Assembly (NCBI RefSeq): GCF_006345805.1 | Contig: NW_021833453.1 | Location: 8,255-72,254, forward strand | From: Octopus sinensis | Lineage: Eukaryota | Length of the DNA stretch: 64,000 nucleotides | Direction of reading: 5' to 3' | Shown here: positions 13,581 through 40,400 of the stretch, piece by piece | Numbering within the stretch: position 1 is the first letter of the stretch | Layout: each line of letters opens with the position of its first letter | Notes under the pieces: model-generated | What the model was told of the DNA's origin: nothing | The model's database searches: none | What the model saw: only the letters and a program-made list of their open reading frames with translations | Made by a program: the position numbers and the translations under genes

Positions 13581-13985
13581 GTAAGAATCTTATAGCTACC
13601 TTTTGCAACACCTGTCACTACCACCACCATCCTACTAACACTGTTACTATAACAACACAGAGACAACGGAGCCTCTGTATCGTTACTTGATCTGTTAGAA
13701 ATATCAGTTAGCTCTCCCTCAAATCCAGTCTTTGGATCAAGAGTAACTTTCTTTTATCTCTCACCCAGGGGAAAAAGGAAGAAAACACACACTCAGGTGC
13801 TCACAGACACACACACAAGGCTACTGCCCTACCCTCTCTGAAAGTAAAAAAAAAAATTATTTTGTTAATTTTCACTTGCATATCCCTCATCGTTTTTAAT
13901 TGAATGATTTTTTTGATTTTTTTTTAACTGTCTTTAAATGAAATTATCTAATTAGTTAATTTGTTTCTTTTTATTTTGTTACTAG

Positions 13986-18552: not shown

Positions 18553-19871
18553 GAATGTACCCCACAACATAGACTAATAGTTAGTGACTTCAGGATCAGG
18601 TCTAAGAGACGACCAACATGGAGAAGAAGGATCTGGAAGCTTAAAGATCCTGCGAATGGACAGAGACTTAGGGACATATTACTTGAAGCCGTTGACGAAG
18701 TAGTAGGAGATATAGCTTCACATAGGGTAGAAGACTACTGGAGGTCTCTAAGGGACAACCTGCCACGGACCAGATCTGTGGATGGTGTAAAGTACCCTCT
18801 CGACTCAAAATAACGTGGTGGTGGAACAATGTTGTAGACAGGGCTATTAGAGAAAAGAGACAGGCTTGGAAGGACTGGAAAAATGGTGGTAGCAGGGAAT
18901 TGTATCAGACTGCCAAAAGAGAAGCTAGGAGACAGGTTTATTTAGCCAGAGGGGAAGCAGATAAGAAAAAATTTGCCAATGTTCTGCGCCGTGAGGACCA
19001 AAGGCTGGAGGTATTCTGTGTTGCAAGACAGTGTGTGAGAGAGAATCGTGATGTTGTAGGAGAGAAATGTGTTCGCATAGATGATGGTTCATTAACACTG
19101 AATGAGGCTGCAAAGAGAGAGGTTTGGAGACACCACTATGAAAGGTTGCTGAATAAAAAAAATGAATGGGATAAAAAGAGTCTGCCGAATGTCGACCCAA
19201 CAGAGGGACCAGCTATCTGAGTTGACAGTTCCTTAGTAGTTAAGGCAATTAGTGGAATGAAGACAGGGAAAGCCCCAGGCCCATCAGGAATTACTGCAGA
19301 GATGCTTAAAATATCTGGTAGTGTCGGCTATAGTCTAGTCACCCATATAGTTAACCAGGTGATACATGAAGGAGTCATACCCAATGACTGGTGTAGCAGC
19401 ATAATAGTCAATTGCTACAAAGGTAAAGGTCACGCTTTTAGATACAAATAATTACAGAGGTATCAAGCTGTTGGATTAGGTAATGAAGGTTACGGAGAGG
19501 GTCATAGCCCAACTGATTAGGGTGAGTGTCAGCTTGGATGAGATGCAGTTTGGTTTAGTGCCAGGGAAAAGCACCACTGATGCTATATTCCTGGTAAGAC
19601 AGCTGCAGGAGAAATATCTAGCCAAAGATAAGCCCCTGTACCTGGCTTTCGTTGACATGCAGAAAGCCTTTGATAGAGTCCCCCGATCCCTTATCAATGA
19701 GGAAACTAGGGATAGATGAATGGTTAGTGAGAGCTGTACAAGCCATGTACACGCTGTCAGTAAGGTGAGGGTTGGCAACGAGTATACTAAAGAATTCAGG
19801 GTAGAGGTAGGGGTCCACCAAGGTTCTGTCCTCACCCCCCTCCTATTTATCATAGTCCTCCAGGCAATAAC
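18553..19871 (+). mobile_element. RTE LINE internal fragment, truncated at both ends
   Basis: Runs from ECTPQHRLIVSDF to GVHQGSVLTPLLFIIVLQAIT. Reverse-complement homolog of the 1-1739 copy, with several frameshifts. Confidence 0.93.
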
Positions 19872-19892
19872 TCCTTCTGAGTCGACTTCACT

Positions 19893-19956
19893 GTCCATAC
19901 CCTTCGGTCCATACCCTTCCGTCCATACCCTTCCGTCCATACCCTTCCGTCCATAC
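19893..19956 (+). repeat. 14-bp minisatellite (GTCCATACCCTTCC) x ~4.6
   Basis: Units at 19893, 19907, 19921, 19935 and a partial at 19949. Confidence 0.95.
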
Positions 19957-20033
19957 ATTATACCTGCCAAATTTAAGACACATTTACAATATTTCAAATC
20001 TCACTTAAAAATTAAAAAATATAAATCCTATTG

Positions 20034-21665
20034 TAAGGGTTAGGGTTAGGGATAGGGGTAGGGTTAGGGTTAGGGTTAGGGTTAGAGTTAGGGAAAGGGT
20101 TAGGGTTAGGGTTAAGTGTAGGGTTAGGGATAGGGTTACGGTTTGGATTAGGGTTTGGATTAGGGTTACGGTAAGGTCTAGGGTCAGGGTTAGGGTAAGG
20201 GGTAGAGTTAGGGTTAGGGTTAGGGTTAAGTGTAGGATTAGGGTTAGGGTTATGGTTTGGATTAGGCTAAGGTAAGGAATTAGAGTCAGGGTTAGGGTTA
20301 GGGTAAGGGGTAGAGTTAGGGTTAGGGTTAGGGGTTAGAGTAAGGGTTAGGGTTAAGTGTAGGTTAGGGTTAGGGTTAGAGTTAGGTTAGGGTTAGGGTA
20401 AGGGTTAGGGTTAGGGTTAGGGTAAGGGATAGAGTTAGTGTTAGGGTTAGGGTTAGGGTTAAGTGTAGGGTTGGGGTTAGGGTTAGGGTTAGCATTAGGG
20501 TTAGGGTTAGGGTTATGGTTTGGATTAGGCTAAGGTAAGGGATTAGAGTCAGGGTTAGGGTAAGGGGTAGATTTAGGGTTAGGGTTAGGTTGTGGGTTAA
20601 GTGTAGGGTTAGGTTAGGGTTAGGGTAAGGGATAGAGTTAGTGTTAGGGTTAGGGTTAGAGTTAGGGTTAGGGTTAGGGTTAGGTTGTGGGTTAAGTGTA
20701 GGGTTAGGGTTAGGGATAGGGTTAAGGTTAGGGTTAGGGTTAGGGCGAGGTTCAGGGATTAGGGTTAGGGTTAGGGTAGGGTTAAGTTTAGGGTTAGCGT
20801 TAGGATTAGGATTAGGGTTAGGGTTAGGGTTAGTGTTAGGGTTAGAGTTAGGGTTAGGGTTATGGTTTGGATTAGGGTTACGGTTAGGGCTAGGGTCAGG
20901 GATTAGAGTCAGGGTTAGGGTAAGGGGTAGAGTTAGTGTTAGGGTTAGGGTTAGGGTAAGGGTTAGGGTTAAGGAAAGGGTTGGGGTTAGGGTTATGGTT
21001 TGGATTAGGGTTACGGTTAGGGCTAGGGTCAGGGATTAGATTCAGGGTTAGGGTAAGGGGTAGAGTTTGTGTTATGGTTAGGGTTAAGGTTAGGGTTAGG
21101 GTTAGGGTTAGGGTTGGGTTTTGGGTTAGGGATAGGGTTAGGGTTAGGGTTACGGTTACGGTCAGGGATTAGAGTCAGGGTAAGGGGTAGAGTTAGGGTT
21201 AGGGTTAGGGTTAGGGTTAGGGTTAGAGTTAGGTTAGGGTTAGGGTTAGGGTTAATGTTAGGGTTAGGGTTAGCTGTAGAGTTAGTGTAAGGGATAGGGT
21301 TAGGGTTAGGTGTAGAGTTAGTTTTAGGGTTAGGGTTAAGTTTAGGGCTAGGGTCAGGGGTTAGAGTCAGGGTTAGGGTTAGGGTTAGGGGTAGAATTAG
21401 GGTTAGGATTAGGTTAGGGTTTGATTAATTTTAAGGTTAGTGTTAGGGTTAGGGTTAGCGTTTGGAGTAGGTTTACGGTTAGGGCTAGTGGTTAGAGTCA
21501 GGTTAGGGTTAGTTTTAGGGTGAGGGGTTAGGGTTAGGGTTGGGGTTAGAGTTTGGCTTAGGGTTAGGGTTAGTGTTGGGGTTAGGGTTAAGGTTAGGGT
21601 TGGGGGTTAGGGTTGGAGTTAGGTTGGGGTTAGGTTTATGGTTAGCATTAGGGTTTGAGTTAGTG
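20034..21665 (+). repeat. Degenerate interstitial telomere-type array (TTAGGG)n, ~1.6 kb
   Basis: About 270 hexamers, canonical TTAGGG mixed with variants such as TTAGAG, TAAGGG, TCAGGG, TTAAGT and TTTGGA. Confidence 0.96.
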
Positions 21666-21756
21666 TCAAATATAAGTTAATTGATAGAAAATAAGCTTAC
21701 GTTGATTGTAAGAGTTCACTGAAATCAGAAAAAGTTTTCAGAAAAGTATTGCAAAT

Positions 21757-22144
21757 GCACACACAAAACTCACATAAAACACAGAAAACATCGACAAAAC
21801 ACACGCAAAATGCACACAATACACACAAAACAAATAAAACACACACCAAAGGCACAAAAAACACGAAAAACTACAAAACAAACAATACGCACACACTAAA
21901 CTCACACAAAACAGACAAAATATACACAGAAGACAAACAAAATACAACTAACAGGAACGCAAAACACAAAAAACAGCAACAAAACAAACAAGACATAAGA
22001 AATATGCAAAACACACCTGAAATCACACAACCCACACAACACAACTACTACTACTATTACTAATACTACTACTACTATTACTAATATTATTACGTCTACT
22101 ATGACAACTACTTCTACTACTACTAATATTACTACTACTATTTT

Positions 22145-22179
<35 letters not shown>

Positions 22180-22214
22180 ATTCTACTAGTACTACTATTT
22201 GTACTACTACTACT
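21757..22214 (+). repeat. G-poor low-complexity module: AC-rich tract then (TAC)n
   Basis: AC-rich 21757-22036, then (TAC/TAA)n 22040-22214. Flanked by the direct repeat AGTATTGCAAAT. Confidence 0.85.
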
Positions 22215-22656
22215 AGTATTGCAAATAAGCATGAAAAAGTCAACAAAATTGCAAATGAGAAATTGTTGCTTCTTAGTGGACATTTAACACATTTGTGACA
22301 TCACTTTTCTGACTCACTTAATGTTGTTTTGGAACTATGTATTAGCTGGTCGATAATAAGATTGTATGTAATAAAATATTTTATTACAATCACTAAAGTC
22401 ATTCATAGAAATCTAAATGTATCAAAATAATGCAAATATGTAAGAATGATAATAATATTAATAATTATAATGATAATAACAAAGTGTTTGTCAGAAAAAT
22501 GACATCTAACAAATGTGTAACGAGTGCACTGAAAAAACAAATTTAAATTTGCAATTTTGTTCACATTTACTTGCTTATTTGCAATACTTAGAATTTTGTT
22601 TTCTGAAAACTTTTCTGATTTCAGTGAACTCTTAAATCAATGCAAGTTTATTTTCA

Positions 22657-22811
22657 AACCAACCCCAACACTAACCCTAACAAAAACCCTAAAATTTACC
22701 CTAACTGTATCCCAAACCCCAAAAACCTAACCTTAAACATAACCCTAATTCCAACAGTATCGGTAACCCAACCCCTGAACACTAACCCTATCCCTAAACG
22801 TAACCCTAACC
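22657..22811 (-). repeat. Short, highly degenerate telomere-type tract in the opposite orientation ((CCCTAA)n on +)
   Basis: ACTAACCCTAA, ACCCTAAC, ACCCTATCCCTAA and GTAACCCTAACC. Confidence 0.75.
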
Positions 22812-22815
22812 ATTT

Positions 22816-23535
22816 TCTACTAATACTACTACTATTTGTACTACTACTACTACTAATAATAATACTTACTATAACTACTACTACTATAACTACTACTACT
22901 ACTACTAATACTACTAATACTAGTACTACTACTTCGACTACTACTACTACTAATACTTCTACTATTTGAACTACTACTAATTCTACTAATGCTACACAAA
23001 ACAAACGAAAAAACACGCCTCACGCACAAAACACCCGCGAAACAGACGCAAAGCACACAAAACAAACAAAAAACACAGACAAAACAAATACAAAACACAC
23101 AAAACACAAAAAGCACAAAAAACACAGAAAAAACACCATAAGGCAAAACTAACACACTAAAAACAAGCATTACCCAAAAAACACAAAAAGCACAAAAAAC
23201 AAGCAAAACTCACATAAAACAAAAACAAAAGACTTTTCAAATGCATAAAAAAGATGCATAAAAAAGACAAAACACAAAAAGTCTTGTGTTTACAAGACAC
23301 TCTCAAAACACACTCAAAACACACTCAAAACACACAAAAACTACACACAAAACAAGCACTAAAGACTCTTAAAAGACACAAAACACTCTTGAAAGCACAA
23401 ATAAAACACACAAAATACACACAAGAAACATAGTAAAAAAAATCAAAATACTCAAAAGTCACAAAAAACAGACACAAAAACACACAAAACAAACACAAAA
23501 ACTCTTCAAAGACACTAAAAAGACACAAAAAACAC
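22816..23535 (+). repeat. (TAC)n tract followed by AC-rich low-complexity tract
   Basis: Same two sequence types as 21757-22214, in reversed order on the same strand. Confidence 0.85.
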
Positions 23536-23539
23536 TTTT

Positions 23540-24317
23540 TTGACTTGAGTGATCTCTTCGGTAAATATAAGTTAACTGATTGATAAAAAGCTTATATTTA
23601 TCCAAGAGGTCACTGAAGTCTCGAAAGTTTTCAGGCATATGTCTTTTGGATCAGTTTTTTGTGACTTTTTTGTTTTGAGTGTCTTTTGAGTGTTTTCGGT
23701 TGTTTTCTGTGTATTTTTTGTGTGTTTTCAAAATTGCTAATTTAAATTTGCAATATTGGATCCTTCGGGATACAATATTGCAAATTTAAATTAGCAATTT
23801 TGATAAATTTTGATAAATTTAATTTTTTTATCAATCAGCTAACTTGTATTTACCCAAAGAGATCACTCAATTCATAAAAGCTTTCAGAAAAGAAAACCTG
23901 TCAAATAAGCATAACAAATTGAACAAAATTGCTAATTCAAATTTGTTGTTTTTTAGTACTTATTTGCAATATTTTCATGTATTTTTTTAATCTGAAAACT
24001 TTTGACACTTTAGTGATCTCTTTGATAAATATAAATCCAAGAGTTCACTCAATTCATAAAACTTTTCAGAAAATAAAATGTGTCAAAATATTGCAAATAA
24101 GTATTAAAAAAAAAAAGTGTCAAAAGTTTCCAAGATACATGTGTCAATGTATTGCAAATGCGTATTTAAAAAACAACAAATATGAATTAGCAAATTTTGT
24201 TCATTTTTTATGCTTATTTGCAATATTTTGACACATTTTATACCCTGAAAACATTTGAGACTTCAGTGATTTCTTGAGTAATTATAAGATCAAAAGTTTT
24301 CAAGATACAGAATATGT
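23540..24317. repeat. Diverged monomers related to the 141-bp AT satellite, mixed orientations
   Basis: GTGATCTCT, ATAAGTTAACTGATTGATAAAAAGCTTATATTTATCCAAGAG and CAAAATATTGCA motifs and their reverse complements. Confidence 0.8.
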
Positions 24318-24825
24318 CAGTGCCTCTGACTCACCAAAGATTATGTCAAACCTCTGGAGATCGTTTATCATGTTCAGTCATCTGGTGCAGGGCTTGCCAT
24401 GGGGACCTTCCAGCTTATGGCTGAATGGTCTTAGGGAGGTCATCGTGCATATAGCTGACCAGGTAAAATGATGCTTTGCATCCCTGGCAACCCTGTAACA
24501 GTGCCTCTGCATCACCCAAGATTATATCAAAACTCTGGAGATCATCGTTTATCATGTTCAATCATCTGGTGCAGCGTTTCCCATGGGGTCCCTTTCAGCC
24601 TCTAGCTGAATGGTCTTAGGGAGGTCATCGTGCATAGAGCTGACCAAGTCCAAAAATGCTTCCAATCCCTGGCAACCCTGCACCAGTGCTTCTGCATCAC
24701 CCAAGATTATATAAAACCTCTGAAGATCATTCTTTATCATGTTCAGACATCTGGTGCAAGGCTTGCCATGGGGTCCCTTCCAGCCTGTAGCTGAATGGTC
24801 TTGGGGAGTTCATCGGGCATAGAGC
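24318..24825 (-). repeat. 185-bp GC-rich satellite, ~2.7 inverted copies
   Basis: Reverse complement of the 24835-28547 unit. Confidence 0.9.
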
Positions 24826-24834
24826 AGAGTCCAA

Positions 24835-27800
24835 TATGCACGATGACCTCCCTAAGACCATTCAGCTACAGGCTGGAAGGGAACCCTGCACCAGATGACT
24901 GAACATGATAAACGAAAATCTCCAGAAATTTGATATAATCTTGGGTGATTTAGAGGCACTGGTACAGGGTTGGCAGGGATGGGAAGCATTATTGGACTTG
25001 GTCAGCTCTATGCACGATGACCTCCCCAAGACCATTCAGCTACAGGCTGGAAGGGACCCCATGACAAGCCCTGCACCAGATGGCTGAACGTGATAAACGA
25101 TGATCTCAAGAGGTTTGATATAATCTTGGGTGATACAGATGCACTAGTACAGGGTTGCCAGGGATGGGAAGAATTATTGGACTTGGTCAGCTCTACGCCC
25201 GATGACCTCCCCAAGACCATTCAGCTACAGGCTTGAAGGGACCCCATGGCAAGCCCTGCACCAGATGTCTGAACATGATAAAGAATGATCTTCAGAGGTT
25301 TGATATAATCTTGGGTGATGCAGAGGCACTGGTGCAGGGTTGCCAGGGATGGGAAGCATTATTGGACTTGGTCAGCTCTGTGCACGATGACCTCCCTAAG
25401 ACCATTCAGCTACAGGCTGGAAGGGTCCCCAAGGCAAGCCCTGCACCAGATGGCTAAACATGATAAACGATGATCTCAAGAGGTTTGATATAATCTTGGG
25501 TGATACAGATGCACTGGTACAGGGTTGCCAGGGATGGGAAGCATTGTTGGACTTGGTCAGCTATATGCACGATGACCTCCCTAAGACCATTCAGCTACAG
25601 GCTGGAAGGGACCCCATGGCAAGCCCTGCACCAGATGTCTGAACATGATAAAGAATGATCTTCAGAGGTTTGATATAATCTTGGGTGATGCAGAGGCATT
25701 GGTGCAGGGTTGCCAGAGATGGGAAGCGTCATTGGACTTGGTCAGCTATATGCACGATGACCTCCCTAAGACCATTCAGCTACAGGCTTGAAGGGACCCA
25801 ATGGCAAGCCCTGCACCAGATGGCTGAACTTGATAAACGATGATCTCAAGAGGTTTGATATAATCTTGGGTGATGCAGGGGCACTGGTACAGGGTTGGCA
25901 GGGATGGGAAGCATTATTGGACTTGGTCAGCTCTATGCACGATGACCTCCGCAAGACCATTCAGCTACAGGCTTGAAGGGACCCCAAGGATAGCCCTGCA
26001 CCAGATGACTGAACATGATAAATGAACATCTCCAGATGTTTGATATAATCTTTGGTGATGCAGGGGCACTGGTACAGGGTTGCCAGGGATGGGAAGAATT
26101 ATTGGACTTGGTCAGCTCTATGCACGATGACCTCCCTAAGACCATTCAGCTACAGGCTGGAAGGGACCCCATGGCAAGCCCTGCACCAGATGGCTAAACA
26201 TGATAAACGATGATCTCCAGAGGTTTGATATAATCTTGGGTGATGCAGAGGCACTGGTACAGGGTTGCAAGGGATGGGAAGCATTATTGGACTTGGTCAG
26301 CTATATGCACGATGACTTCCCTAACACCATTCAGCTACAGGCTTGAAGGGACCCCATGGCAAGCCCTGCACCAGATGTCTGAACATGATAAACGATGATC
26401 TTAAGAGTTTGATATAATCTTGGGTGATACAGAGGCATTGGTACAGGGTTGCCAGGGATGGGAAGAATTATTAGACTTGGTCAGCTCTATGCCCGATGAC
26501 CTCCCCAAGACCATTCAGCTACAGTCTGGAAGGGACCCCATGGCAAGCCCTGCACCAGATGGCTAAACATGATAAACGATGATCTCAAGAGGTTTGATAT
26601 AATCTTGGGTGATACAGAGGCATTGGTACAGGGTTGCCAGGGATGGGAAGAATTATTGGACTTGGTCAGCTCTATGCACGATGACCTCCCTAAGACCATT
26701 CAGCTACAGTCTGGAAGGGACCCCATGGCAAGCCCTGCACCAGATGGCTAAACATGATAAACGATGATCTCCAGAGGTTTGATATAATCTTGGGTGATGC
26801 AGAGGCACTGGTACAGGGTTGCAAGGGATGGGAAGCATTATTGGACTTGGTCAGCTATATGCACGATGACTTCCCTAACACCATTCAGCTACAGGCTTGA
26901 AGGGACCCCATGGCAAGCCCTGCACCAGATGGCTGAACATGATAAACGATGATCTTAAGAGGTTTGATATAATCTTGGGTGATACAGAGGCATTGGTACA
27001 GGGTTGCCAGGGATGGGAAGAATTATTAGACTTGGTCAGCTCTATGCCCGATGACCTCCCCAAGACCATTCAGCTACAGGCTGGAAGGGACCCCATGGAC
27101 AGCCCTGCACCAGATGGCTAAACATGATAAACGATGATCTCAAGAGGTTTGATATAATCTTGGGTGATACAGAGGCATTGGTACAGGGTTGCAAGGGATG
27201 GGAAGCATTATTGGACTTGGTCAGCTATATGCACGATGACTTCCCTAACACCATTCAGCTACAGGCTTGAAGGGACCCCATGGCAAGCCCTGCACCAGAT
27301 GGCTGAACATGATAAACGATGATCTCCAGAGGTTTGATATAATCTTGGGTGATGCAGAGGCACTGGTACAGGGTTGCAAGGGATGGGAAGCATTATTGGA
27401 CTTGGTCAGCTCTATGCACGATGACCTCCCTAAGACCATTCAGCTACAGGCTGGAAGGGTCCCCATGGCAAGCCCTGCACCAGATGGCTAAACATGATAA
27501 ACGATGATCTCAAGAGGTTTGATATAATCTTGGGTGATGCAGAGGCACTGATGCAGGGTTGCCAGAGATGGGAAGCATCATTGGACTTGGTCAGCTATAT
27601 GCACGATGACCTCCCTAAGACCATTCAGCTACAGGCTTGAAGGGACCCCATGGCAAGCCCTGCACCAGATGTCTGAACATGATAAAGAATGATCTCAAGA
27701 GGTTTTATATAATCTTGTGAGATGCAGAGGCACTGGTACAGGGTTGCCTAGGGATGGGAAGAATTATTGGACTTGGTCAGCTCTATGCCCGATGACCTCC

Positions 27801-28547
27801 CCAAGACCATTCAGCTACAGGCTTGAAGGGACCCCATGGCAAGCCCTGCACCAGATGTCTGAACATGATAAAGAATGATCTTCCGAGGTTTTATATAATC
27901 TTGGGTGATGCAGAGGCACTGGTACAGGGTTGCCTAGGGATGGGAAGAATTATTGGACTTGGTCAGCTCTATGCCCGATGACCTCACCAAGACCATTCAG
28001 CTACAGGCTTGAAGGGACCCCATGGCAAGCCCTGCACCAGATGTATGAATATGATAAAGAATGATCTTCAGAGGTTGATATAATCTCTGGTGATGCAGAG
28101 GCACTGGTGCAGGGTTGCCAGAGATGGGAAGCGTCATTGGACTTGGTCATCTATATGCACGATGACCTCCCTAAGACCATTCAGCTACAGGCTGGAAGGG
28201 ACCCCATGGCAAGCCCTGCACCAGATGGCTGAACTTGATAAACGATGATCTCAAGAGGTTTGATATAATCTTGGTGATACAGAGGCATTGGTACAGGGAT
28301 GCCAGGAATGGGAAGCATTATTGGACCTGGTCAGCTCTATGCACGATGACCTCCCTAACACCATTCAGCTACAGGCTGGAAGGGACCCCAAGGATAGCCC
28401 TGCACCAGATGACTGAACATGATAAATGAACATCTCCAGATGTTTGATATAATCTTTGGTGATGCAGGGGCACTGGTACAGGGTTGGCAGGGATGGGAAG
28501 CATTATTGGACTTGGTCATCTCTATGCACGATGACCTCCCTAAGACA
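24835..28547 (+). repeat. 185-bp ~50% GC tandem satellite, ~20 copies
   Basis: The marker CCCTGCACCAGATG recurs every ~185 bp. ORF starts at 25460 and 26015 differ by 555 (3x185), and 26897 and 27267 differ by 370 (2x185). Confidence 0.97.
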
Positions 28548-30440
28548 GACACAAAAGACTCTTAAAAGACATTTAAAAAGACATAAAAAATATTTTTGTT
28601 TTCTCTGTGTTTTATAAGAACTTATAAAACACAGACAAAACAAAAATAAGAAAACAAAAATAAGAAAAAAAATAAGAAAAAAATATGCAAAAATAACACA
28701 AAAAACACAAAACAATACCAAAATGTCACTAAAGTGTTAAAAGTTTTCAGGTTAGAAAATGTCAAAATATTGCAAATATGTACTAAATTAAAACAAATTT
28801 CAATTGGCAATTTTGATCACTGTGTTATGCTTATTTGCAATACTTTGACACATTCTGAAAACTTCTGAGATATGAATAAAACGTGTCTAAATATTGCAAA
28901 TAATTTCTAAACAATCAGAAAATTGAATTAGCAATTTTGGTCACTTTTTTATGCTTCTTTGCAATATTTTGATACATTTTGTTTTCTGAAACTTTTGTGA
29001 ATTGTATGATCTCTCGTTAACTGGTTGATTATAAGATTATATTTATCCAAGAGATCACTGAATTCTCGAACGTTCTCAGGCTACAAAATGTGAACAAAAT
29101 TGCAAATTGAAATTTGTTGTCTTTTAGTACATATTTGCAATAATTTGACACATTTTGTATCCTAAAAAATTTTGACATTTTTTTATCTATTTCATAAATA
29201 TAATCAGCTAACTTGTATTTACACTAGAGATCACACAAGTTTGTTGTTTTTTCGCACTTATTCACAATATTTTGACATATTTTGTATCCTGGAAACTTTT
29301 CACAATTTGGTGATCTCTTTGATAAATATAATCTTATTATTTACCGAAGAGATCACAGTTTTTGTGCTTAGTTTGTGTGAGTTTTGTTTTATTTTGTTTC
29401 ACATGTCTTTTGTGTCAGTTTTTTGTGACTTTTGTGTTTTAAGTGTCTTTTGAGTGTTTTTATTTGTTTTCTGTGTATTTTGTGTGTGTTTTCAAAATTG
29501 CTAATTTAAATTTGCAATATTGTATCCTGAAAACTTTTGATAAATTTAATTTTTTTATACACAAGAGATCACTGAATTCATAAAAGCTTTCAGAAAAATA
29601 AAACCTGTCAAATAAGCATAACAAATTGAACAAAATTGCTATTTCAAATTTGTTGTTTTTTAGTACTTATTTGCAATATTTTAACGTATTTTTTTAATCT
29701 GAAAACTTTTGACAATTTAGTGATCTCTTTGATAAATCTAATCTTATCAATCAGCTGTTACATTTATCCATGAGTTCACTCAATTCATAAAAACTTTTCA
29801 GAAAATAAAATGTGCCAAAATATTGGAAATAAGCAAAAAAATCTGAACAAAATTGCAAATTTAAATTAAACTTTTGATACTTCTGTGATCTCTGATAAAT
29901 ATAATCAGTTTTACCAAATAGAGAAAACAAAATGTGTCAAAATATTGCAAATAAGCATAAAAAAGTGAACCACGTTGCTAATTCAAATTTGTACTTCTTT
30001 AGTATATGCAATATTTTAAAACATTTTGTATCCTGAAATCTTTTGATACTTTAATGATCTCTTTGATAGATATAATCTCTAAGAAACAAATTTGAATTAG
30101 CAACTTTGTTCACTGCTTAGTGTTTGGGTAATAAAATTATATTTATCACAGAGATCACTAAGGTTTTCAGAATAGAAAATGTGTCGAGATATTGCATAAA
30201 AAAAACAAATTTAAATTAGCAAACTTTTGTGATTTCAGTGATCTCTTGGGAAAATCTTTAATAAGATTATAATAAGATTACATTTATATAAGTATTCACT
30301 AAACTTTTCAGAATACAAAATGGGTCAAATATTGCAAATGGGTATTAAAAAAACAACAAATTTGAATTAGCAAATTTTGTTCATTTTTTATGCTTATTTG
30401 CAATATTTTGACACGTTTTGTATCCTGAAAAGTTTTCAAG
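28548..30440. repeat. AC/GT-rich tracts and diverged, palindromic AT-satellite-related monomers
   Basis: AC-rich 28548-28720, GT-rich 29358-29495, and many CAAAATATTGCAAAT / ATTTGCAATATTTTG pairs. Confidence 0.8.
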
Positions 30441-31430: not shown

Positions 31431-34400
31431 TCAAGTTTTCAGGTTAGAAAATGTCAAAATATTGCATGTGTACTTGAAAAAACAACAAAAAATTTAGTGA
31501 TCTCTTAGCTAAATATGAATTAACTGATTGATAAACAGCTTATATTTATCCAAGAGATCACTAAAATCTCAAAAGTTTTCAGGTCAGAAAATGTCAAAAT
31601 ATTGCATATGTGTACTTGAAAAACAAAAAAAAATTTAGTGATCTCTTAGCTAAATATAAGTAAACTGAATGATAAAAAGCTTATATTTACCCAAGAGATC
31701 ACTAAAATCGCTAAAGTTTTCAGGTTAGAAAATGTCAAAATATTGCATATGTGTACTTAAAAAACAAAAAAAATTTAGTGATCTCTTCGCTAAATATAAG
31801 TTAACTGATGATAAAAAGCTTATATTTATCCAACAGATCACTAAAATCTCAAAAGTTTTCAGGTTAGAAAATGTCAAAATATTGCATATGTGTACTTGAA
31901 AAACAACAAAAAATTTAGTGATCTCTTAGCTAAATATAAGTTAAATGATTGATAAAAAGCTTTTATTTATCCAAGAGATCACTAAATTCGCAAAAGTTTT
32001 CAGGTTAGAAAATGTCAAAATATTGCATATGTGTACTTGAAAAACAACAAAAAATTTAGTGATCTCTTAGCTAAATATATGTTAACTGATTGATAAAAAG
32101 CTTATATTTATCCAAGAGATCACTAAAATCTCAAAAGTTTTCAGGTTAGAAAATGTCAAAATATTGCATATGTGTACTTGAAAAACAACAAAAAATTTTG
32201 TGATCTCTTAGCTAAATATAAGTTAACTGATTGATAAAAAGCTTATATTTATCCAAGAGATCACTAAAATCGCAAAAGTTTTCAGGTTAGAAAATGTCAA
32301 AATATTGCATATGTGTACTTGAAAAACAACAAAAAATTTAGTGATCTCTTAGCTAAATATAAGTTAACTGATTGATAAAAAGCTTATATTTATCCAAGAG
32401 ATCACTAAAATCGCAAAAGTTTTCAGGTTAGAAAATGTCAAAATATTGCATATGTGTACTTGAAAAACAACAAAAAATTTAAAGCTAAATATAAGGTAAC
32501 TGATTGATAAAAAGCTTATATTCATCCAAGAGATCACTAAAATCTCAAAAGTTTTCAAGTTAGAAAATGTCAAAATATTACATATGTGAACTTGAAAACA
32601 ACAAAAAATTTAATGATCTCTTAGCTAAATATAAGTAAACTGAATGATGAAAAGCTTATATTTACCCAAGAGATCACTAACGCAAAAGTTTTCAGGTTAG
32701 AAAATGTCAAAATATTGCATAAGTGTACTTGAAAAACAACAAAAAATTTAGAGATCTAATAGCTAAATATAAGGTAACTGATTGATAAAAAGCTTATATT
32801 TATCCAAGAGATCACTAAAATCTCAAAAGTTTTCAGGTTAGAAGATATCAAAATATTGCATATGTGTACTTGAAAAACAACAAAAAATTTAGTGATCTCT
32901 TCGCTAAATATAAGTTAACTGATTGATAAAAACCTTATATGTATCCAATATATCACTAAAGTCTCAAACGTTTTCAGGTTGGAAAATGCCAAAATATTGC
33001 ATATGTGTTCTTGAAAAACAACAAAAAATTTAATGATCTCTTAGCTAAATATAAGTTAGCTGATTGATAAAAAGCTTAACCAAGAGATCACTAAAATCGC
33101 AAAAGTTTTCAGGTTAGAAAATGTCAAAATATTGCATATGTGTACTTGAAAAACAACAAAAAATTTAGAGCTAAATATAAGTTAACTGATTGATAAAAAG
33201 CTTAGATTCATCCAAGAGATCACTAAAATCTCAAAAGTTTTCAGGTTAGAAAATGTCAAAATATTGCATATGTGAACTTGAAAAACAACAAAAAATTTAG
33301 TGATCTCTTAGCTAAATATAAGTTAACTGAATGATAAAAAGCTTATATTTACCCAAGAGATCACTAACGCAAAAGTTTTCTGGTTACAAAATGTCAAAAT
33401 ATTGCATATGTGTACTTGAAAAACAACAAAAATTTAGTGATCTAATAGCTAAATATAAGGTAACTGTTGATAAAAAGCTGATATTTATCCAACAGATCAC
33501 TAAAATCTCAAAAGTTTTCAGGTTAGAAAATGTCAAAATATTGCATATGTGTACTTGAAAAACAACAAAAATTTAGAGCTAAATATAAGTTAACTGATTG
33601 ATAAAAAGCTTATATTTATCTAAGAGATCACTAAAATCTCAAAAGTTTTCAGTTAGAAAATGTCAAAATATTGCATATGTGTACTTGAAAAACAACAAAA
33701 AATTTAGTGATCTAATAGCTAAATATAAGCTAACTGATTGATAAAAAGCTTATATTTATCCAAGAGATCACTAAAATCTCAAAAGTTTTCAGGTTAGAAG
33801 ATATCAAAATATTGCATATGTGTACTTGAAAAACAACAAAAAATTTAGTGATCTCATAGCTAAATATAAGTTAACTGATTGATAAAAACCTTATATGTAT
33901 CCAATATATCACTAAAGTCTCAAACGTTTTCAGGTTAGAAAATGCCAAAATATTGCATATGTGTTCTTGAAAAACAACAAAAAATTTAATGATCTCTTAG
34001 CTAAATATAAGTTAGCTGATTGATAAAAAGCTTAACCAGAGATCACTAAAATCGCAAAAGTTTTCACGTTACAAAATGTCAAAATTTGCATATGTGTACT
34101 TAAAAAACAACAAAAATTTAGAGCTAAATATAAGTTAACTGATTGATAAAAAGCTTATATTCATCCAAGAGATCACTAAAATCTCAAAAGTTTTCAGGTT
34201 AGAAAATGTCAAAATATTGCATATGTGAACTTGAAAAACAACAAAAAATTTAGTGATCTCTTAGCTAAATATAAGTTAACTGAATGAAAAAAAGCTTATA
34301 TTTACCCAAGAGATCACTAACGCAAAAGTTTTCTGGTTACAAAATGTCAAAATATTGCATATGTGTACTTGAAAAACAACAAAAAATTTAGTGATCTAAT

Positions 34401-37400
34401 AGCTAAATATAAGGTAACTGGTTGATAAAAAGCTGATATTTATCCAACAGATCACTAAAATCTCAAAAGTTTTCAGGTTACAAAATGTCAAAATATTGCA
34501 TATGTGTACTTGAAAAACAACAAAAAATTTAGAGCTAAATATAAGTTAACTGATTGATAAAAAGCTTATATTTATCCAAGAGATCACTAAAATCTCAAAA
34601 GTTTTCAGGTTAGAAAATGTCAAAATATTGCATATGTGTACTTGAAAAACAACAAAAAATTTAGTGATCTAATAGCTAAATATAAGCTAACTGATTGATA
34701 AAAAGCTTATATTTATCCAAGAGATCACTAAAATCTCAAAAGTTTTCAGGTTAGAAGATATCAAAATATTGCATATGTGTACTTGAAAAACAACAAAAAA
34801 TTTAGTGATCTCATAGCTAAATATAAGTTAACTGATTGATAAAAACCTTATATGTATCCAATATATCACTAAAGTCTCAAACGTTTTCAGGTTGGAAAAT
34901 GCCAAAATATTGCATATGTGTACTTGAAAAACAACAAAAAATTTAATGATCTCTTAGCTAAATATAAGTTAGCTGATTGATAAAAAGCTTAACCAAGAGA
35001 TCACTAAAATCGCAAAAGTTTTCAGGTTAGAAAATGTCAAAATATTGCATATGTGTACTTGAAAAACAACAAAAAATTTAGAGCTAAATATAAGTTAACT
35101 GATTGATAAAAAGCTTATATTCATCCAAGAGATCACTAAAATCTCAAAAGTTTTCAGGTTGGAAAATGTCAAAATATTGCATATGTGAACTTGAAAAACA
35201 ACAAAAAATTTAGTGATCTCTTAGCTAAATATAAGTTAACTGAATGATAAAAAGCTTATATTTACCCAAGAGATCACTAACGCAAAAGTTTTCAGGTTAG
35301 AAAATGTCAAAATATTGCATATGTGTACTTGAAAAACAACAAAAAATTTAGTGATCTCTTAGCTAAATATAAGTTAGCTGATTGATAAAAAGCTTAACCA
35401 AGAGATCACTAAAATCGCAAAAGTTTTCAGGTTAGAAAATGTCAAAATATTGCATATGTGTACTTGAAAAACAACAAAAAATTTAGTGATCTCTTAGCTA
35501 AATATAAGTTAACTGATTGATAAAAGCTCATATTTATCCAAGAGATCACTAAAATCGCGAAAGTTTCAGGTTAGAAAATGTCAAAATATTGCATATGTGT
35601 ACTTGAAAAACAACAAAAGATTTAGTGATCTCTTGGCTAAATATAAGTTAGCTGATTGATAAAAAGCTTATATTTATCCAAGAGATCACTAAAATCTCAA
35701 AAGTTTTCAGGTTAAAAAATGTCAAAATATTGCATATGTGAACTTGAAAAACAACAAAAAATTTAGTGATCTCTTGGCTAAATATAAGTTAGCTGATTGA
35801 TAAAAAGCTTATATTTATCCAAGAGATCACTAAAATCTCAAAAGTTTTCAGGTTAGAAAATGTCAAAATATTGCATATGTGTACTTGAAAAACAACAAAA
35901 AATTTAGAGCTAAATATAAGTTAACTGATTGAAAAAAAGCTTATATTCATCCAAGAGATCACTAAAATCTCAAAAGTTTTCAGGTTAGAAAATGTCAAAA
36001 TATTGCATATGTGAACTTGAAAAACAACAAAAAATTTAGTGATCTCTTAGCTAAATATAAGTAAACTGAATGATAAAAAGCTTATATTTACCCAAGAGAT
36101 CACTAACGCAAAAGTTTTCAGGTTACAAAATGTCAAAATATTGCATATGTGTACTTGAAAAACAACAAAACATTTAGTGATCTAATAGCTAAATATAAGG
36201 TAACTGATTGATAAAAAGCTGATATTTATCAAGAGATCACGAAAATCTCAAAAGTTTTCAGGTTAGAAAATGTCAAAATATTGCATATGTGTACTTGAAA
36301 AACAACAAAAAATTTAGAGCTAATATAAGTTAACTGATTGATAAAAAGCTTACATTTATCCAAGAGATCACTAAAATCTCAAAAGTTTTCAGGTTAGAAA
36401 ATGTCAAAATATTGCATATGTGTACTTGAAAGACAACAAAAAATTTAGTGATCTAATAGCTAAATATAAGGTAACTGATTGATAAAAAGCTTATATTATC
36501 CAAGAGATCACTAAAATCTCAAATGTTTTCGGTTAGAAGATATCAAAATATTGCATATGTGTACTTGAAAAACAACAAAAAATTTAGTGATCTCTTAGCT
36601 AAATATAAGTTAACTGATTGATAAAAGCTCATATTTATCCAAGAGATCACTAAAATCGCGAAAGTTTTCAGGTTAGAAAATGTCAAAATATTGCATATGT
36701 GTACTTGAAAAACAACAAAAGATTTAGTGATCTCTTGGCTAAATATAAGTTAACTGATTGATAAAAAGCTTATATTTATCCAAGAGATCACTAAAATCAC
36801 AAAAGTTTTCAGGTTAGAAAATGTCAAAATATTGCATATGTGTACTTGAAAAACAACAAAAAATTTAGTGATCTCTTGGCTAAATATAAGTTAACTGATT
36901 GATAAAAAGCTTATATTTATCCAAGAGATCACTAAAATCGCAAAAGTTTTCAGGTTAGAAAATGTCAAAATATTGCATATGTGTACTTGAAAAACAACAA
37001 AAAATTAGAGCTAAATATAAGTTACTGATTGATAAAAAGCTTATATTCATCCAAGAGATCACTAAAATCTCAAAAGTTTTCAGGTTAGAAAATGTCAAAA
37101 TATTGCATATGTGAACTTGAAAAACAACAAAAAATTTAGTGATCTCTTAGCTAAATATAAGTAAACTGAATGATAAAAAGCTTATATTTACCCAAGAGAT
37201 CACTAACGCAAAAGTTTTCAGGTTACAAAATGTCAAAATATTGCATATGTGTACTTGAAAAACAACAAAACATTTAGTGATCTAATAGCTAAATATAAGG
37301 TAACTGATTGATAAAAAGCTGATATTTATCCAAGAGATCACGAAAATCTCAAAAGTTTTCAGGTTAGAAAATGTCAAAATATTGCATATGTGTACTTGAA

Positions 37401-40400
37401 AAACAACAAAAAATTTAGAGCTAAATATAAGTTAACTGATTGATAAAAAGCTTACATTTATCCAAGAGATCACTAAAACTCAAAAGTTTTCAGGTTAGAA
37501 AATGTCAAAATATTGCATATGTGTACTTGAAAGACAACAAAAAATTAGTGATCTCATAGCTAAATATAAGGTAACTGATTGATGAAAAGCTTATATTTAT
37601 CCAAGAGATCACTAAAATCTCAAATGTTTTCGGTTAGAAGATATCAAAATATTGCATATGTGTACTTGAAAAACAACAAAAAATTTAGAGCTAAATATAG
37701 TTAACTGATTGATAAAAAGCTTATATTTATCCAAGAGATCACTAAAATATTAAAAGTTTTAAGGTTAGAAAATGTCAAAATATTGCATATGTGTACTTGA
37801 AAAACAACAAAAAATTTAGTGATCTAATAGCTAAATATAAGTTAACTGATTGATAAAAAGCTTATATGTATCCAATATATCACTAAAGTCTCAAACGTTT
37901 TCAGGTTGGAAAATGCCAAAATATTGCATATGTGTACTTGAAAAACAACAAAAAATTTAGTGATCTCTTAGCTAAATATAAGTTAGCTGATTGATAAAAA
38001 CTTATATTTATCCTAGAGATCACTAAAATCTCAAAAGTTTTCAGGTTAGAAAATGTCAAAATATTGCATATGAGTACATGAAAAACAACAGAAAATTTAG
38101 TGATCTCTTAGCTAAATATAAGTTAGCTGATGATAAAAAGCTTAACCAGAGATCACTAAAATCGCAAAAGTTTTCAGGTTAGAAAATGTCAAAATATTGC
38201 ATATGTGTACTTGAAAAACAACAAAAAATTTAGTGATCTCTTAGCTAATATAAGTTAACTGATGATAAAAGCTCATATTTATCCAAGAGATCACTAAAAT
38301 CTTAAAAGCTTTCAGGTTAGAAAATGTCAAAATATTGCATATGTGTACTTGAAAAACAACAAAAAATTTAGAGCTAAATATAAGTTAACTGATTGATAAA
38401 AAGCTTATTTATCCAAGAGATCACTAACGCAAAAGTTTTCAGGTTACAAAATGTCAAAATATTGCATATGTGTACTTGAAAAACAACAAAAAATTTAGTG
38501 ATCTAAAAGCTAAATATAAGGTTACTGGTTGATAAAAAGCTGATATTTATCCAAGAGATCACTAAAATCTCAAAAGTTTTCAGGTTAGAAAATGTTAACT
38601 GTCAAATATAGCATATATGTACTTGAAAAACAACAAAAAATTTAGAGCTAAACATAAGTGAACTGATTGATAAAAACTTATATTTATCCTAGAGATCACT
38701 AAAATCTCAAAAGTTTTCAGGTTAGAAAATGTCAAAATATTGCATATGTGTACTTCAAAAACAACAAAAACTTTAGTGATCTAATAGCTAAATATAAGGT
38801 AACTGATTGTTAAAAAGCTTATATTTATCCAAGAGATCACTAAAATCGAAAAAGTTTTCAGGTTAGAAAATGTCAAAATATTGCAAATGTGTACTTGAAA
38901 AACAACAAAAAATTTAGTGATCTAATAGCTAAATAAGTTAACTGATTGATAATGAGCTTAATATATCCAATATATCACTAAAGTCTCAACGTTTTCAGGT
39001 TGGAAAATGCCAAAATATTGCATATGTGTACATGAAAAACAACAAAAAAATTTAGTGATCTCTTAGCTAAATATCAGTTAGCTGATTGATAAAAAGCTTA
39101 ACCAGAGATCACTAAAATCGCAAAAGTTTTCAGGTTAGAAAATGTCAAAATATTGCATATGTGTACTTGAAAAACAACAAAAAATTTAGTGATCTCTTTG
39201 CTAAATATAAGTTAGCTGATTGATAAAAAGCTTATATTTATCCTAGAGATCACTAAAATCTCAAAAGTTTTAAGGTTAGAAAATGTCAAATTATTGCATA
39301 TGGTGTACTTGAAAAACAACAAAAAATTTAGACCTAAATATAAGTTAAATGATTGATAAAAAGCTTATATTTATCCAATATATCACTAAAATCTCAAAAG
39401 TTTTCAGGTTAGAAAATGTCAAAATATTGCATATGTGTACTTGAAAGACAACAAAAAATTTAGAGATAAATATAAGTTAACTGATTGATAAGAAGCTTAT
39501 ATTTATCCAAGAGATCACTAAAATCTCAAAAGTTTTCAGGTTAGAAAATGTTAAAATATTGCATATGTGTACTTGAAAAACAACAAAAAATTTAGAGCTA
39601 AATATAATTTAACTGATTGATAATAAGCTTATATTTATCCAAGAGAACACTAAAATCTCAAAAGTTTTCAGGTTAGAAAATGTCAAAATATTGCAAATGT
39701 GTACTTGAAAAACAACAAAAAATTTAGTGATCTAATAGCTAAATATAAAGTAACTGATTGATAAAAAGCTTATATTTATCCAAGAGATCACTAAAATCGA
39801 AAAAGTTTTCAGGTTAGAAAATGTCAAAATATATAGTGATCTCTTAGCTAAATAAAAGTTAACTGATTGATAAAAACTTATATTTATCGAAGTGATCTCT
39901 TAGCTAAATAAAAGTTAACTGATTGATAAAAACTTATATTTATCGAAGAGATCACTAAAATCTTAAAAGTTGTCAGGTTAGAAGATATCAAAATATTGCA
40001 TATGTGTACTTGAAAAACAACAAAAAATTTAGTGATCAAATAGCTAAATATAAGTTAACTGATTGATAAAAAGCTTAAATGTATCCAATATATCATTGAA
40101 GTCTCAAACGTTTTCAGGTTGGAAAATGCCAAAATATTGCATATGTGTACTTGAAAAACATCAAAAAATTTAGTTATCTCTTAGCTAAATATAAGTTAGC
40201 TGATTGATAAAAAGCTTAACCAAGAGATCACTAAAATCGCAAAAGTTTTCAGGTTAGAAAATGTCAAAATATTGCATATGTGTACTTGAAAAACAACAAA
40301 AAATTTAGAGCTAAATATAAGTTAACTGATTGATAAAAAGCTGATATTTATCCAAGAGATCACTAAAATCCAAAAAAGTTTTCAGGTTAGAAATTTTCAA

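What the first reader, a model, noticed from the sequence alone, without database searches (positions are those of the whole stretch)
20034..22811. Buried telomere: head-to-head TTAGGG / CCCTAA tracts bracketing a ~1 kb palindrome
Seen: the (TTAGGG)n array ends at 21665 and a degenerate (CCCTAA)n starts at 22657. The DNA between them is an inverted repeat: 21688-21756 plus 22215-22320 are the reverse complement of 22482-22655, around a ~160-bp spacer. The variant TTAGGGTTAGTGTTGGGGTT (~21558) reappears inverted at ~22660-22680. Established: head-to-head degenerate telomeric arrays mark end-to-end fusions (e.g. human chromosome 2), and fold-back palindromes mark breakage-fusion-bridge repair. 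Inference: a former chromosome end that was capped by satellite-type DNA and fused or folded back, then internalised next to a large satellite. Because the arms are copies of each other, fold-back or sister fusion fits better than fusion of unrelated ends.
Basis: partly seen in the sequence, partly recalled or inferred. Interest (0 to 1): 0.75.

Follow-up and report, generated by a model that had tools for sequence, protein, structure and literature searches.

The report
Degenerate interstitial telomere array beside satellite
A decayed 1.6-kb telomere-type repeat block lies where ordinary gene-bearing DNA meets a large satellite domain in what looks like an octopus genome, and its junction with the satellite was copied once in mirror image; it is real and old, but a familiar kind of feature and not yet evidence of a chromosome fusion.

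Summary
A degenerate (TTAGGG)n array (20036-21665) is 86% identical to the perfect repeat. A short (CCCTAA)n tract (22657-22811, 76%) faces it head-to-head. Between them lies an inverted repeat: 21687-21756 plus 22215-22320 against 22482-22655, with a 161-bp spacer.

Four findings weaken the fusion or fold-back reading:
- The array behaves like a satellite. Blocks of already-mutated repeats were re-duplicated (147 repeated variant 24-mers against 0.2 expected), and decay is uniform along it.
- The arms are diverged monomers of the neighbouring 141-bp satellite family, which forms at least seven more inverted pairs nearby.
- Half of the "1 kb" is a 458-bp low-complexity insertion with a 12-bp target duplication, present in the left arm only. 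The original palindrome was about 520 bp.
- Inverted homology stops about 155 bp into the right tract, and the outer flanks are unrelated.

Arm divergence of roughly 18-26%, plus the one-sided insertion, rules out a fold-back read artefact.

Best reading: an interstitial telomeric sequence at a gene/satellite boundary, with an old local inverted duplication of its junction. A former chromosome end is possible, because the polarity fits, but chromosome position and synteny could not be tested.

The parts
18600..19871 (+). Decayed LINE reverse-transcriptase fragment, 3'-truncated at 19871. It is the last recognisable 'ordinary' DNA before the telomere-type array.
   Evidence: The translation shows RT motifs with stops and frameshifts. 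Positions 19604-19871 are 89% identical to the LINE copy at 7241-6962, which continues to about 5700, so this copy is cut in mid-RT.
19872..20035 (.). 164-bp linker, unique within the window. It includes a 14-bp minisatellite (GTCCATACCCTTCC x4.6, 19893-19956) and an AT-rich stretch ending ...TTGTAAG|GGTTAGGG.
   Evidence: TRF. No other copy in the window. Sequence read directly.
20036..21665 (+). Degenerate (TTAGGG)n array with the G-strand on +, so its polarity points rightwards. It has 114 perfect hexamers and is 86% identical to the perfect repeat. It is built partly of re-duplicated variant blocks.
   Evidence: Variant motifs recur at 95-360-bp spacings. There are 147 repeated variant-rich 24-mer pairs against 0.2 expected. 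Block 20843-20953 matches 20976-21086 at 94.6%.
21666..21756 (+). Left arm, part A: a diverged monomer of the local satellite family. Inverted homology starts at 21687.
   Evidence: Positions 21668-21699 are 88% identical to the monomer at 23563-23594 (D8).
21757..22214 (+). 458-bp insertion in the left arm only: a CA-rich (ACACAAAAC-like) tract at 21757-22040, then (ACT)n at 22044-22215. It is flanked by the 12-bp direct duplication AGTATTGCAAAT (21745-21756 and 22215-22226).
   Evidence: The right arm holds a single copy of the 12-mer (22577-22588, - strand), which is the empty site. TRF.
22215..22320 (+). Left arm, part B: continuation of the interrupted monomer.
   Evidence: 78% identical to the reverse complement of the right arm over 101 bp. 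Alignment.
22321..22481 (.). 161-bp AT-rich spacer, or loop, of the inverted repeat. It contains a fragment of the same monomer family.
   Evidence: Positions 22385-22442 match family copies at 83-89%.
22482..22655 (-). Right arm: an uninterrupted monomer in inverted orientation.
   Evidence: It is the reciprocal nearest relative of the left arm.
22657..22811 (-). Short, more decayed telomere-type tract, read as CCCTAA on + (76% identical to the perfect repeat). Its polarity points leftwards, head-to-head with the main array.
22817..23535 (+). (CTA)n block of 172 bp (22817-22988), then a CA-rich tract (22994-23535). The (CTA)n block is a direct (same-strand) relative of the (ACT)n block inside the left-arm insertion.
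   Evidence: TRF. Positions 22824-22995 against 22046-22213 are 80% identical over 174 bp on the same strand.
23563..24310 (.). Mosaic of family monomers in alternating orientation, forming several small palindromes. It is directly duplicated at 29400-30431.
   Evidence: Self-palindromes at 23725-23807 (90%) and 23949-24116 (78%).
24318..28546 (.). 185-bp satellite in two blocks of opposite orientation, with a fold-back junction at 24770-24886 (52-nt arms, 92%, 13-nt spacer). A third block lies at 30454-31437.
28726..30437 (.). Second mosaic of family monomers in alternating +/- orientation.
31433..64000 (+). 141-bp satellite, also scored at 273- and 411-bp periods. All copies are on +, and the array runs off the window end. 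It belongs to the same family as the palindrome arms.
   Evidence: TRF. 206 BLAST hits of the arm, all on +. Internal dyad in the monomer.

Best explanation
This is an interstitial telomeric sequence (ITS): a decayed telomere-type array lying exactly where gene-bearing DNA meets a satellite domain of more than 40 kb. The genome is probably that of an octopod.

Shown:
- The array is real, 14% diverged from TTAGGG, and evenly decayed.
- It has grown or been reshuffled by tandem duplication of already-mutated blocks, which is satellite dynamics rather than telomerase synthesis.
- Its distal end abuts a monomer of the neighbouring satellite family.
- That junction exists twice in mirror image around a 161-bp loop: about 155 bp of telomere-type repeat plus a ~175-bp monomer.
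- One arm later received a 458-bp low-complexity insertion with a 12-bp target-site duplication.

Inferred:
- The mirror copy arose by a local fold-back or template-switch event during replication or repair. This fits a satellite family that is itself full of inverted repeats and forms such pairs repeatedly. It does not require fusion of chromosomes or sister chromatids.
- The sequence to the right of the short tract is then simply the original continuation.
- The array may have started as a healed or true chromosome end that later acquired distal satellite DNA. The polarity fits this, but nothing here proves it.
- Today the block is most likely inert heterochromatin. With 51 tandem TTAGGG dimers it could still bind telomere-repeat proteins and act as a fragile or recombination-prone site, as ITSs do in vertebrates.
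For: - Array and tract are real and oriented head-to-head.
- Internal block duplication: 13-mer variant motifs recur six times each at 95-360-bp spacing. 147 variant-rich 24-mer pairs against 0.2 expected, maximum 6 in 500 shuffles. 111-bp and 73-bp duplicated blocks at 93-95%.
- Uniform decay of 84-87% per quarter.
- The arms belong to the satellite family: 206 same-strand hits in the 141-bp satellite and 25 alternating-strand hits at 23.6-24.3 and 28.7-30.4 kb. Other inverted pairs show 78-90% arm identity. A further fold-back junction lies in the 185-bp satellite.
- The arms are reciprocal nearest relatives, and the hairpin is far beyond chance, z = -15.5.
- One-sided insertion with a 12-bp duplication and an empty site in the other arm.
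- No inverted copy of the left flank or LINE lies to the right.
- The left side is genic: alpha-mannosidase II exons at 10413-11462 and 13251-13589.
- Octopod affinity: LINE RT is 82-84% identical to Octopus proteins.
- TTAGGG is the cephalopod telomere motif (PMC13218726).
- ITSs are reported on all chromosomes of a mollusc (PMC12506671).
Against: - The chromosomal position of the window is unknown, so a fusion point or a live subtelomere cannot be excluded.
- Both outer boundaries have exactly the polarity expected of two chromosome ends meeting. A local template switch explains this only because it copies the junction.
- The right tract is not detectably closest to the junction-proximal part of the left array, and the two junctions differ by about 20 bp. 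Homology of the two telomere-type tracts is therefore inferred from position, not shown base by base.
- The margin by which the arms are each other's closest relatives is modest (74% against 69%).
- No related genome could be examined.
Confidence: 0.55

Rival explanations
1. Relic of an end-to-end fusion of two chromosomes, or of two ends that shared the same subtelomeric module. Each end had the order proximal DNA - (TTAGGG)n - satellite monomer. The ends lost their terminal parts and joined within the monomers, leaving the arrays head-to-head.
For: Head-to-head polarity, with both outer boundaries of the chromosome-end type. Both arrays are decayed, as at the human 2q13 fusion site (established knowledge). 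The arms are related but 18-26% diverged, which is compatible with paralogous subtelomeres. Octopods have fewer chromosomes than decapodiform cephalopods (established knowledge; karyotype numbers are discussed in PMC13218726).
Against: 991 bp of non-telomeric DNA separates the arrays. The two arms break off at nearly the same monomer position, a symmetry that is natural for a fold-back and coincidental for two independent ends. The arrays are extremely unequal: 1628 against 155 bp. The right flank is microsatellite and satellite, not a second gene-bearing arm within the window. The array shows satellite-type internal duplication.
Confidence: 0.15
2. Sister-chromatid fusion or fold-back at a broken chromosome end, followed by breakage-fusion-bridge cycles.
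For: Inverted duplication with a short (161-bp) spacer, and arms that are reciprocal closest relatives.
Against: A sister fusion should give arms extending far into the flank. Here inverted homology ends about 155 bp into the telomere-type tract, and there is no inverted copy of 19872-20035 or of the LINE. This would require a second break inside the short tract. Small inverted pairs of the same family are common locally, so a large-scale event is not needed.
Confidence: 0.1
3. Live subtelomere. The window runs toward a present-day chromosome end, the 141-bp satellite is the telomere-associated repeat, and the array is a subtelomeric ITS of the kind found between subtelomeric blocks in human and yeast.
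For: The main array has the orientation expected if the chromosome end lies to the right. The order genic DNA, then ITS, then satellite is the classical subtelomere order. This reading is compatible with the best explanation, of which it is a positional sub-case.
Against: No terminal array is seen in 42 kb of downstream sequence. No further telomere-type tract occurs inside the 141-bp satellite. Position is untestable here.
Confidence: 0.15
4. Assembly or read artefact: a chimeric or fold-back read, or a false join of two telomere-bearing contigs.
For: Palindromes and head-to-head telomere joins are classic assembly errors (general knowledge).
Against: The arms are only about 74-82% identical with several indels, and one arm has a 458-bp insertion with a target duplication. 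A fold-back read would give near-identical arms. Both arrays are far too decayed to be live telomeres (86% and 76%, longest perfect run 5 units).
Confidence: 0.03
5. Part of a mobile element: a foldback-type or Helitron/MITE-type element that carries satellite monomers, microsatellites and telomere-like repeats in its inverted termini.
For: Inverted termini made of tandem subrepeats resemble foldback elements. In bivalves, ~160-bp satellite monomers plus a microsatellite sit inside Helentron-derived non-autonomous elements (recalled knowledge, a lead only). The 458-bp insertion shows that low-complexity mobile DNA is active here.
Against: No target-site duplication flanks the whole block...TTGTAAG on the left against CATTTTC... 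on the right. The termini are grossly unequal, and there is no second copy in the window.
Confidence: 0.02

Closest known systems
Heterochromatic interstitial telomeric sequences (het-ITS / telomere-like satellite) of vertebrates, e.g. the pericentromeric (TTAGGG)n blocks of Chinese hamster (Meyne 1990; Ruiz-Herrera 2008; Bolzan 2017, the last cited in PMC12506671)
   Same: A degenerate telomere-type array embedded at the edge of satellite heterochromatin. It evolves by amplification of variant blocks rather than by telomerase. Origin from an ancient end or fusion is often proposed but usually unproven.
   Different: It is small: 1.6 kb against tens to hundreds of kb. Pericentromeric location is not shown. 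A mirror-image copy of the array/satellite junction is not a standard feature.
Head-to-head fusion ITS at human 2q13 (IJdo et al. 1991)
   Same: (TTAGGG)n facing (CCCTAA)n, both decayed by about 14-24%, and internal to a chromosome-scale sequence.
   Different: At 2q13 the arrays abut directly and are flanked by inverted subtelomeric duplicons of two ancestral chromosomes. Here 991 bp of satellite-type palindrome lies between them, the arrays are 10-fold unequal, and the flanks are unrelated.
Subtelomeric ITSs: human subtelomere block boundaries; yeast X-(TG1-3)-Y'
   Same: The order proximal unique DNA, then telomere-type tract, then repeated telomere-associated DNA. The tract is oriented like a terminal array on that side.
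   Different: Proximity to a chromosome end is not shown. The inverted second copy is atypical.
Fold-back inversions and palindromic duplications from hairpin-primed or template-switch repair (McClintock's BFB cycle; short-inverted-repeat-induced palindromes in Tetrahymena, yeast and human fold-back inversions)
   Same: An inverted duplication around a short unique spacer, arising in DNA rich in short inverted repeats.
   Different: The arms are only about 330 bp and are old (18-26% diverged). There is no evidence of a terminal deletion or of long arms.
Mollusc satellite-carrying non-autonomous Helentron/MITE elements (pearl, DTC84, HINE). Recalled from memory and offered as a lead only.
   Same: Monomers of about 140-170 bp are associated with an adjoining microsatellite tract.
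   Different: No element termini, target-site duplications or multiple copies were demonstrated. Those elements are described in bivalves, not cephalopods.

Membership tests
Fusion-type ITS (telomere-telomere fusion, 2q13 type) | Two telomere-repeat arrays in head-to-head orientation | tested here: met
   TTAGGG on + at 20036-21665; CCCTAA on + at 22657-22811.
Fusion-type ITS (telomere-telomere fusion, 2q13 type) | The arrays abut directly, or nearly so, at the fusion point | tested here: not met
   991 bp (21666-22656) of satellite monomers, spacer and an insertion lie between them.
Fusion-type ITS (telomere-telomere fusion, 2q13 type) | Flanks are two different ancestral chromosome arms, giving a synteny break against outgroups | not testable with these tools
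   No cephalopod genome was available. The metagenome scans found nothing related.
Heterochromatic ITS / telomere-like satellite | A long degenerate telomere-type array adjoining satellite DNA | tested here: met
   1.63 kb at 86% identity, followed by more than 40 kb of satellites.
Heterochromatic ITS / telomere-like satellite | Amplification of variant repeat blocks (higher-order or segmental structure) | tested here: met
   147 against 0.2 repeated variant 24-mer pairs. Duplicated blocks at lags of 133 and 263 bp. The periodicity is irregular (95-360 bp), not one fixed higher-order unit.
Heterochromatic ITS / telomere-like satellite | Pericentromeric or otherwise heterochromatic chromosomal location | not testable with these tools
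   The position of the window is unknown.
Subtelomeric ITS | Lies within the terminal ~100 kb of a chromosome, in the same orientation as the terminal array | not testable with these tools
   The orientation is compatible with an end to the right, but no terminal array is in the window.
Fold-back inversion / BFB palindrome | Inverted duplication around a short spacer | tested here: met
   Arms of ~175 bp plus telomere-type tracts, 161-bp spacer, hairpin z = -15.5.
Fold-back inversion / BFB palindrome | Arms extend for kilobases into the proximal flank, because sister chromatids are identical | tested here: not met
   Homology ends within the 155-bp right tract. There is no inverted copy of 19872-20035 or of the LINE downstream.
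Fold-back or chimeric read artefact | Arms identical within sequencing error | tested here: not met
   74-82% identity, indels, and a one-sided 458-bp insertion with a 12-bp duplication.
Foldback-type transposon | Target-site duplication flanking the whole inverted-terminal element, and multiple copies | tested here: not met
   The flanks ...CCTATTGTAAG and CATTTTCTACT... share no duplication. No second copy is in the window. Genome-wide copy number was not testable.

The most novel reading that the evidence does not exclude
The array is a true molecular fossil of a cephalopod chromosome end. The end was healed or capped, acquired distal satellite DNA, and was then internalised by one of the fusions that reduced the octopod karyotype relative to decapodiform cephalopods. 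If so, this locus pinpoints a fusion breakpoint at base-pair resolution. It would also show that the adjoining hairpin-bearing 141-bp satellite was formerly telomere-associated DNA.
Probability: 0.1. Interest if true: 0.65.

Novelty: new member of a known kind. Interest (0 to 1): 0.3.

Why it matters
Interstitial telomeric sequences are used as markers of past chromosome rearrangements, and they are fragile, recombination-prone sites. Almost nothing is published on them, or on satellite organisation, in cephalopods: the literature searches found no description.

This locus is a clean, base-level example of three things. A telomere-type array can turn into an ordinary satellite. An array/satellite junction can be mirrored by a small local event. 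A head-to-head pattern alone should therefore not be read as a chromosome fusion. If placement on a chromosome-scale assembly showed a synteny break here, the locus would become a dated landmark of octopod karyotype evolution. Otherwise it is an ordinary heterochromatin-boundary feature.

Tried and rejected
- A simple autocorrelation of the array for one fixed higher-order period showed only the 6-bp series. The block duplications have irregular lags and needed k-mer and sliding-window tests. Two BLAST self-comparisons of the array returned nothing usable.
- I tested whether the right tract is specifically derived from the junction-proximal end of the left array. It is not distinguishable from background, so the shared 20-mer is not used as evidence.
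- A first alignment to a perfect repeat with Biopython end-gap settings gave unreliable identities. It was replaced by my own semiglobal alignment.
- The metagenome scan for the 141-bp satellite core gave 0 hits. The scan for an array variant motif gave 4 hits, all unrelated protist-like or GC-rich contigs with short telomere-like tracts. No related genome was reachable. The bacterial, viral, plasmid and E. coli collections are irrelevant and were not used.
- The protein route to an orthologous locus failed. The alpha-mannosidase exon had no hit above 48% identity and none from a cephalopod, so synteny could not be examined.
- Rfam and tRNA scans of 18-32.5 kb and of the whole window found nothing. 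The 458-bp insertion could not be assigned to a SINE or other family.
- My impression that the 185-bp satellite derives from a LINE ORF2 C-terminus was not supported by comparison with the local LINE ORF (E = 0.53), and I dropped it.
- I considered unequal recombination between two monomers as the origin of the left-arm interruption. I rejected it as less parsimonious than an insertion with a 12-bp duplication, given the single-copy empty site in the other arm. The 12-mer is part of a conserved family motif, so homology-mediated insertion remains possible.
Full report
**What is there**

The window has two halves.

The left 20 kb is ordinary gene-bearing DNA. It holds two exons of an alpha-mannosidase II gene at 10413-11462 and 13251-13589 on the + strand. 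It also holds several decayed LINE copies. The LINE reverse transcriptase is 82-84% identical to Octopus bimaculoides and O. vulgaris proteins, so the source is most likely an octopod. This is an inference.

From 20 kb to the window end, almost everything is tandem repeat:
- a telomere-type array (20036-21665);
- a mosaic of ~140-175-bp monomers and CA-rich / (ACT)n tracts (21.7-24.3 and 28.5-30.4 kb);
- a 185-bp satellite in three blocks of alternating orientation (24318-24825, 24884-28546, 30454-31437);
- a 141-bp satellite of more than 32 kb (31433-64000).

**Check of the observation**

The array is real. It has 271 period-6 copies, 114 perfect TTAGGG and a longest perfect run of five units. 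It is 86.3% identical to a perfect repeat, and 84-87% in every quarter.

The opposing tract at 22657-22811 is short and poorer, at 76.3%, with six perfect CCCTAA. It is still far above chance: score 78 against 4.7 +/- 5.5 for shuffles.

The inverted repeat is real. 21687-21756 plus 22215-22320 pairs with 22482-22655 around a 161-bp spacer. With the insertion described below removed, the block folds as one long hairpin: -135.7 kcal/mol against -58.3 +/- 5.0, z = -15.5.

It is not informative, because the right tract matches other parts of the array equally well.

**New anatomy**

1. The left arm is interrupted after AGTATTGCAAAT (21745-21756) by 458 bp, made of a CA-rich tract and then (ACT)n. 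The arm resumes with a second AGTATTGCAAAT (22215-22226). The right arm carries that 12-mer once, at the matching position. This is an insertion with a 12-bp target duplication, so the original palindrome was about 520 bp, not 1 kb.

2. The arms are diverged monomers of the same family as the 141-bp satellite, with 206 hits all on the + strand. The same family gives 25 further hits of alternating orientation at 23.6-24.3 and 28.7-30.4 kb.
   - At least seven of these form +/- inverted pairs of the same polarity as the finding's palindrome, with 78-90% arm identity.
   - The 185-bp satellite has its own fold-back junction with a 13-nt spacer.
   - Part of the mosaic is directly duplicated: 23636-24251 matches 29400-30431.
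   - Inverted and direct local duplications are therefore the norm in this stretch.

3. The telomere-type array carries blocks of already-mutated repeats that were re-duplicated.
   - Two 13-mer variant motifs recur six times each at 95-360-bp spacings.
   - Variant-rich 24-mers form 147 repeated pairs against 0.2 expected, with a maximum of 6 in 500 unit-order shuffles.
   - 20843-20953 matches 20976-21086 at 94.6%.
   - This is satellite-style turnover, not telomerase synthesis, and there is no proximal-to-distal purity gradient.

4. The left LINE is cut at 19871 in mid-RT. A 164-bp linker, unique within the window, precedes the array.

5. Inverted homology stops within the 155-bp right tract. 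Neither the linker nor the LINE reappears inverted to the right.

**Polarity**

This is read directly from the sequence. The G-strand of the main array runs 5'->3' rightwards, and that of the short tract runs leftwards. Both outer boundaries therefore look like 'proximal DNA, then telomere' junctions, and the ~1 kb between them lies beyond both 'ends'.

The inner junction (array followed by a monomer) has the wrong polarity for telomerase healing of a broken satellite. It must come from recombination or end-joining of a telomere-type array to satellite DNA.

**Interpretation**

The most economical reading is an interstitial telomeric sequence at a gene/satellite boundary. Its distal junction was duplicated once, locally and in inverted orientation, by a fold-back or template-switch event. 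The duplicated unit was about 155 bp of array plus one monomer. This happened in DNA whose monomers are themselves dyad-rich and repeatedly form such pairs.

Afterwards the arms diverged to about 74-82% identity, and one of them took an insertion.

This excludes a read or assembly artefact. It also makes the palindrome weak evidence for breakage-fusion-bridge.

A true former chromosome end is a reasonable origin for the array. The polarity fits, and TTAGGG is the experimentally determined cephalopod telomere motif (PMC13218726). However, ITSs occur on all chromosomes of at least one mollusc (PMC12506671). The array's current length reflects satellite dynamics.

Three alternatives remain open, because neither chromosomal position nor synteny could be examined:
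- fusion of two chromosome ends;
- sister-chromatid fusion;
- a present-day subtelomere.

No related genome was reachable with the collections on hand.

**Comparison with known kinds**

The block fits the vertebrate category of heterochromatic or subtelomeric ITS. It meets the tests for a degenerate array next to a satellite and for amplification of variant blocks.

It fails one defining test of a classical fusion ITS, because the arrays do not abut. It fails one defining test of a BFB fold-back, because the arms are not long. Location-based criteria are untestable.

It is therefore a new member of a known kind, with a mirrored junction as a minor peculiarity.

**Verdict**

Interest is low to moderate (0.3). 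It would rise to about 0.65 if a synteny break were shown at this site, which I estimate at about 10%.

Noticed in passing
window 21745-22226: A 458-bp low-complexity insertion (a CA-rich ACACAAAAC-like tract, then a 172-bp (ACT)n) is flanked by a perfect 12-bp duplication, AGTATTGCAAAT. Its (ACT)n block is 80% identical on the same strand, and equal in length, to the (CTA)n block at 22817-22988. There, however, the CA-rich tract lies on the other side, giving a mirror order that is neither direct nor inverted. The nature of the inserted element is unknown; it may be a retroposon with a microsatellite tail, or a local templated insertion.
   Followed up: partly
window 31433-64000: The 141-bp satellite runs for more than 32 kb in uniform orientation, with 273- and 411-bp higher-order periods. 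Each monomer contains a dyad, AGTGATCTCTTAGCTAAATATAAG...CTTATATTTATCCAAGAGATCACT (DNA fold z = -2.35). A ~73-bp partial-monomer variant recurs at about 43384, 50915, 59630 and 63015. Dyad-bearing satellites are typical of centromeres, so this could be a centromeric or a telomere-associated repeat.
   Followed up: partly
window 24318-28546 and 30454-31437: The 185-bp satellite (GC about 49%, against about 26% for its neighbours) lies in three blocks of alternating orientation. A near-perfect fold-back junction sits at 24770-24886, with 52-nt arms, 92% complementarity and a 13-nt spacer. One reading frame stays open for about 54 codons per unit, but shows no significant similarity to the local LINE ORF.
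   Followed up: partly
window 23636-24251 and 29400-30431: A direct segmental duplication (87-92%) of a monomer/TG-rich mosaic includes the same junction into the 185-bp satellite (about 24310 and about 30450). The inverted 185-bp block lies between the two copies.
   Followed up: partly
window 10413-11462 and 13251-13589 (+): Two exons of an alpha-mannosidase II (GH38 C-terminal domain) gene. The first is an unusually long, uninterrupted ~350-codon exon. The best database hit is only 48% identical (oyster), and no cephalopod hit was listed.
   Followed up: partly
window 1-433, 5700-7242, 18600-19871; 4170-4322 and 5617-5771: Three copies of one LINE family (89-93% identical to each other). 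The copy next to the telomere-type array is 3'-truncated, which is unusual for LINEs and implies a later break or rearrangement at 19871. GC-rich 62-bp tandem repeats lie just downstream of the ORF, at 4170-4322 and 5617-5771.
   Followed up: partly
window 19893-19956: A 14-bp minisatellite, GTCCATACCCTTCC x4.6 (98% matches), lies between the truncated LINE and the array. It is unique within the window.
   Followed up: no
L003 (marine metagenome contig Ga0115011_10230539), 225-298, 637-770, 1151-1235: This unrelated GC-rich contig was pulled in by chance. It carries three short telomere-like tracts, two of which (637-770, 1151-1235) are head-to-head mini-palindromes (GGGGTA...TACCCC), inside what looks like coding sequence. 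They are possibly intron-like or mobile insertions in a protist. L002 and L004 share one 95-bp ACCCTA-like tract within a spliced-looking gene.
   Followed up: no
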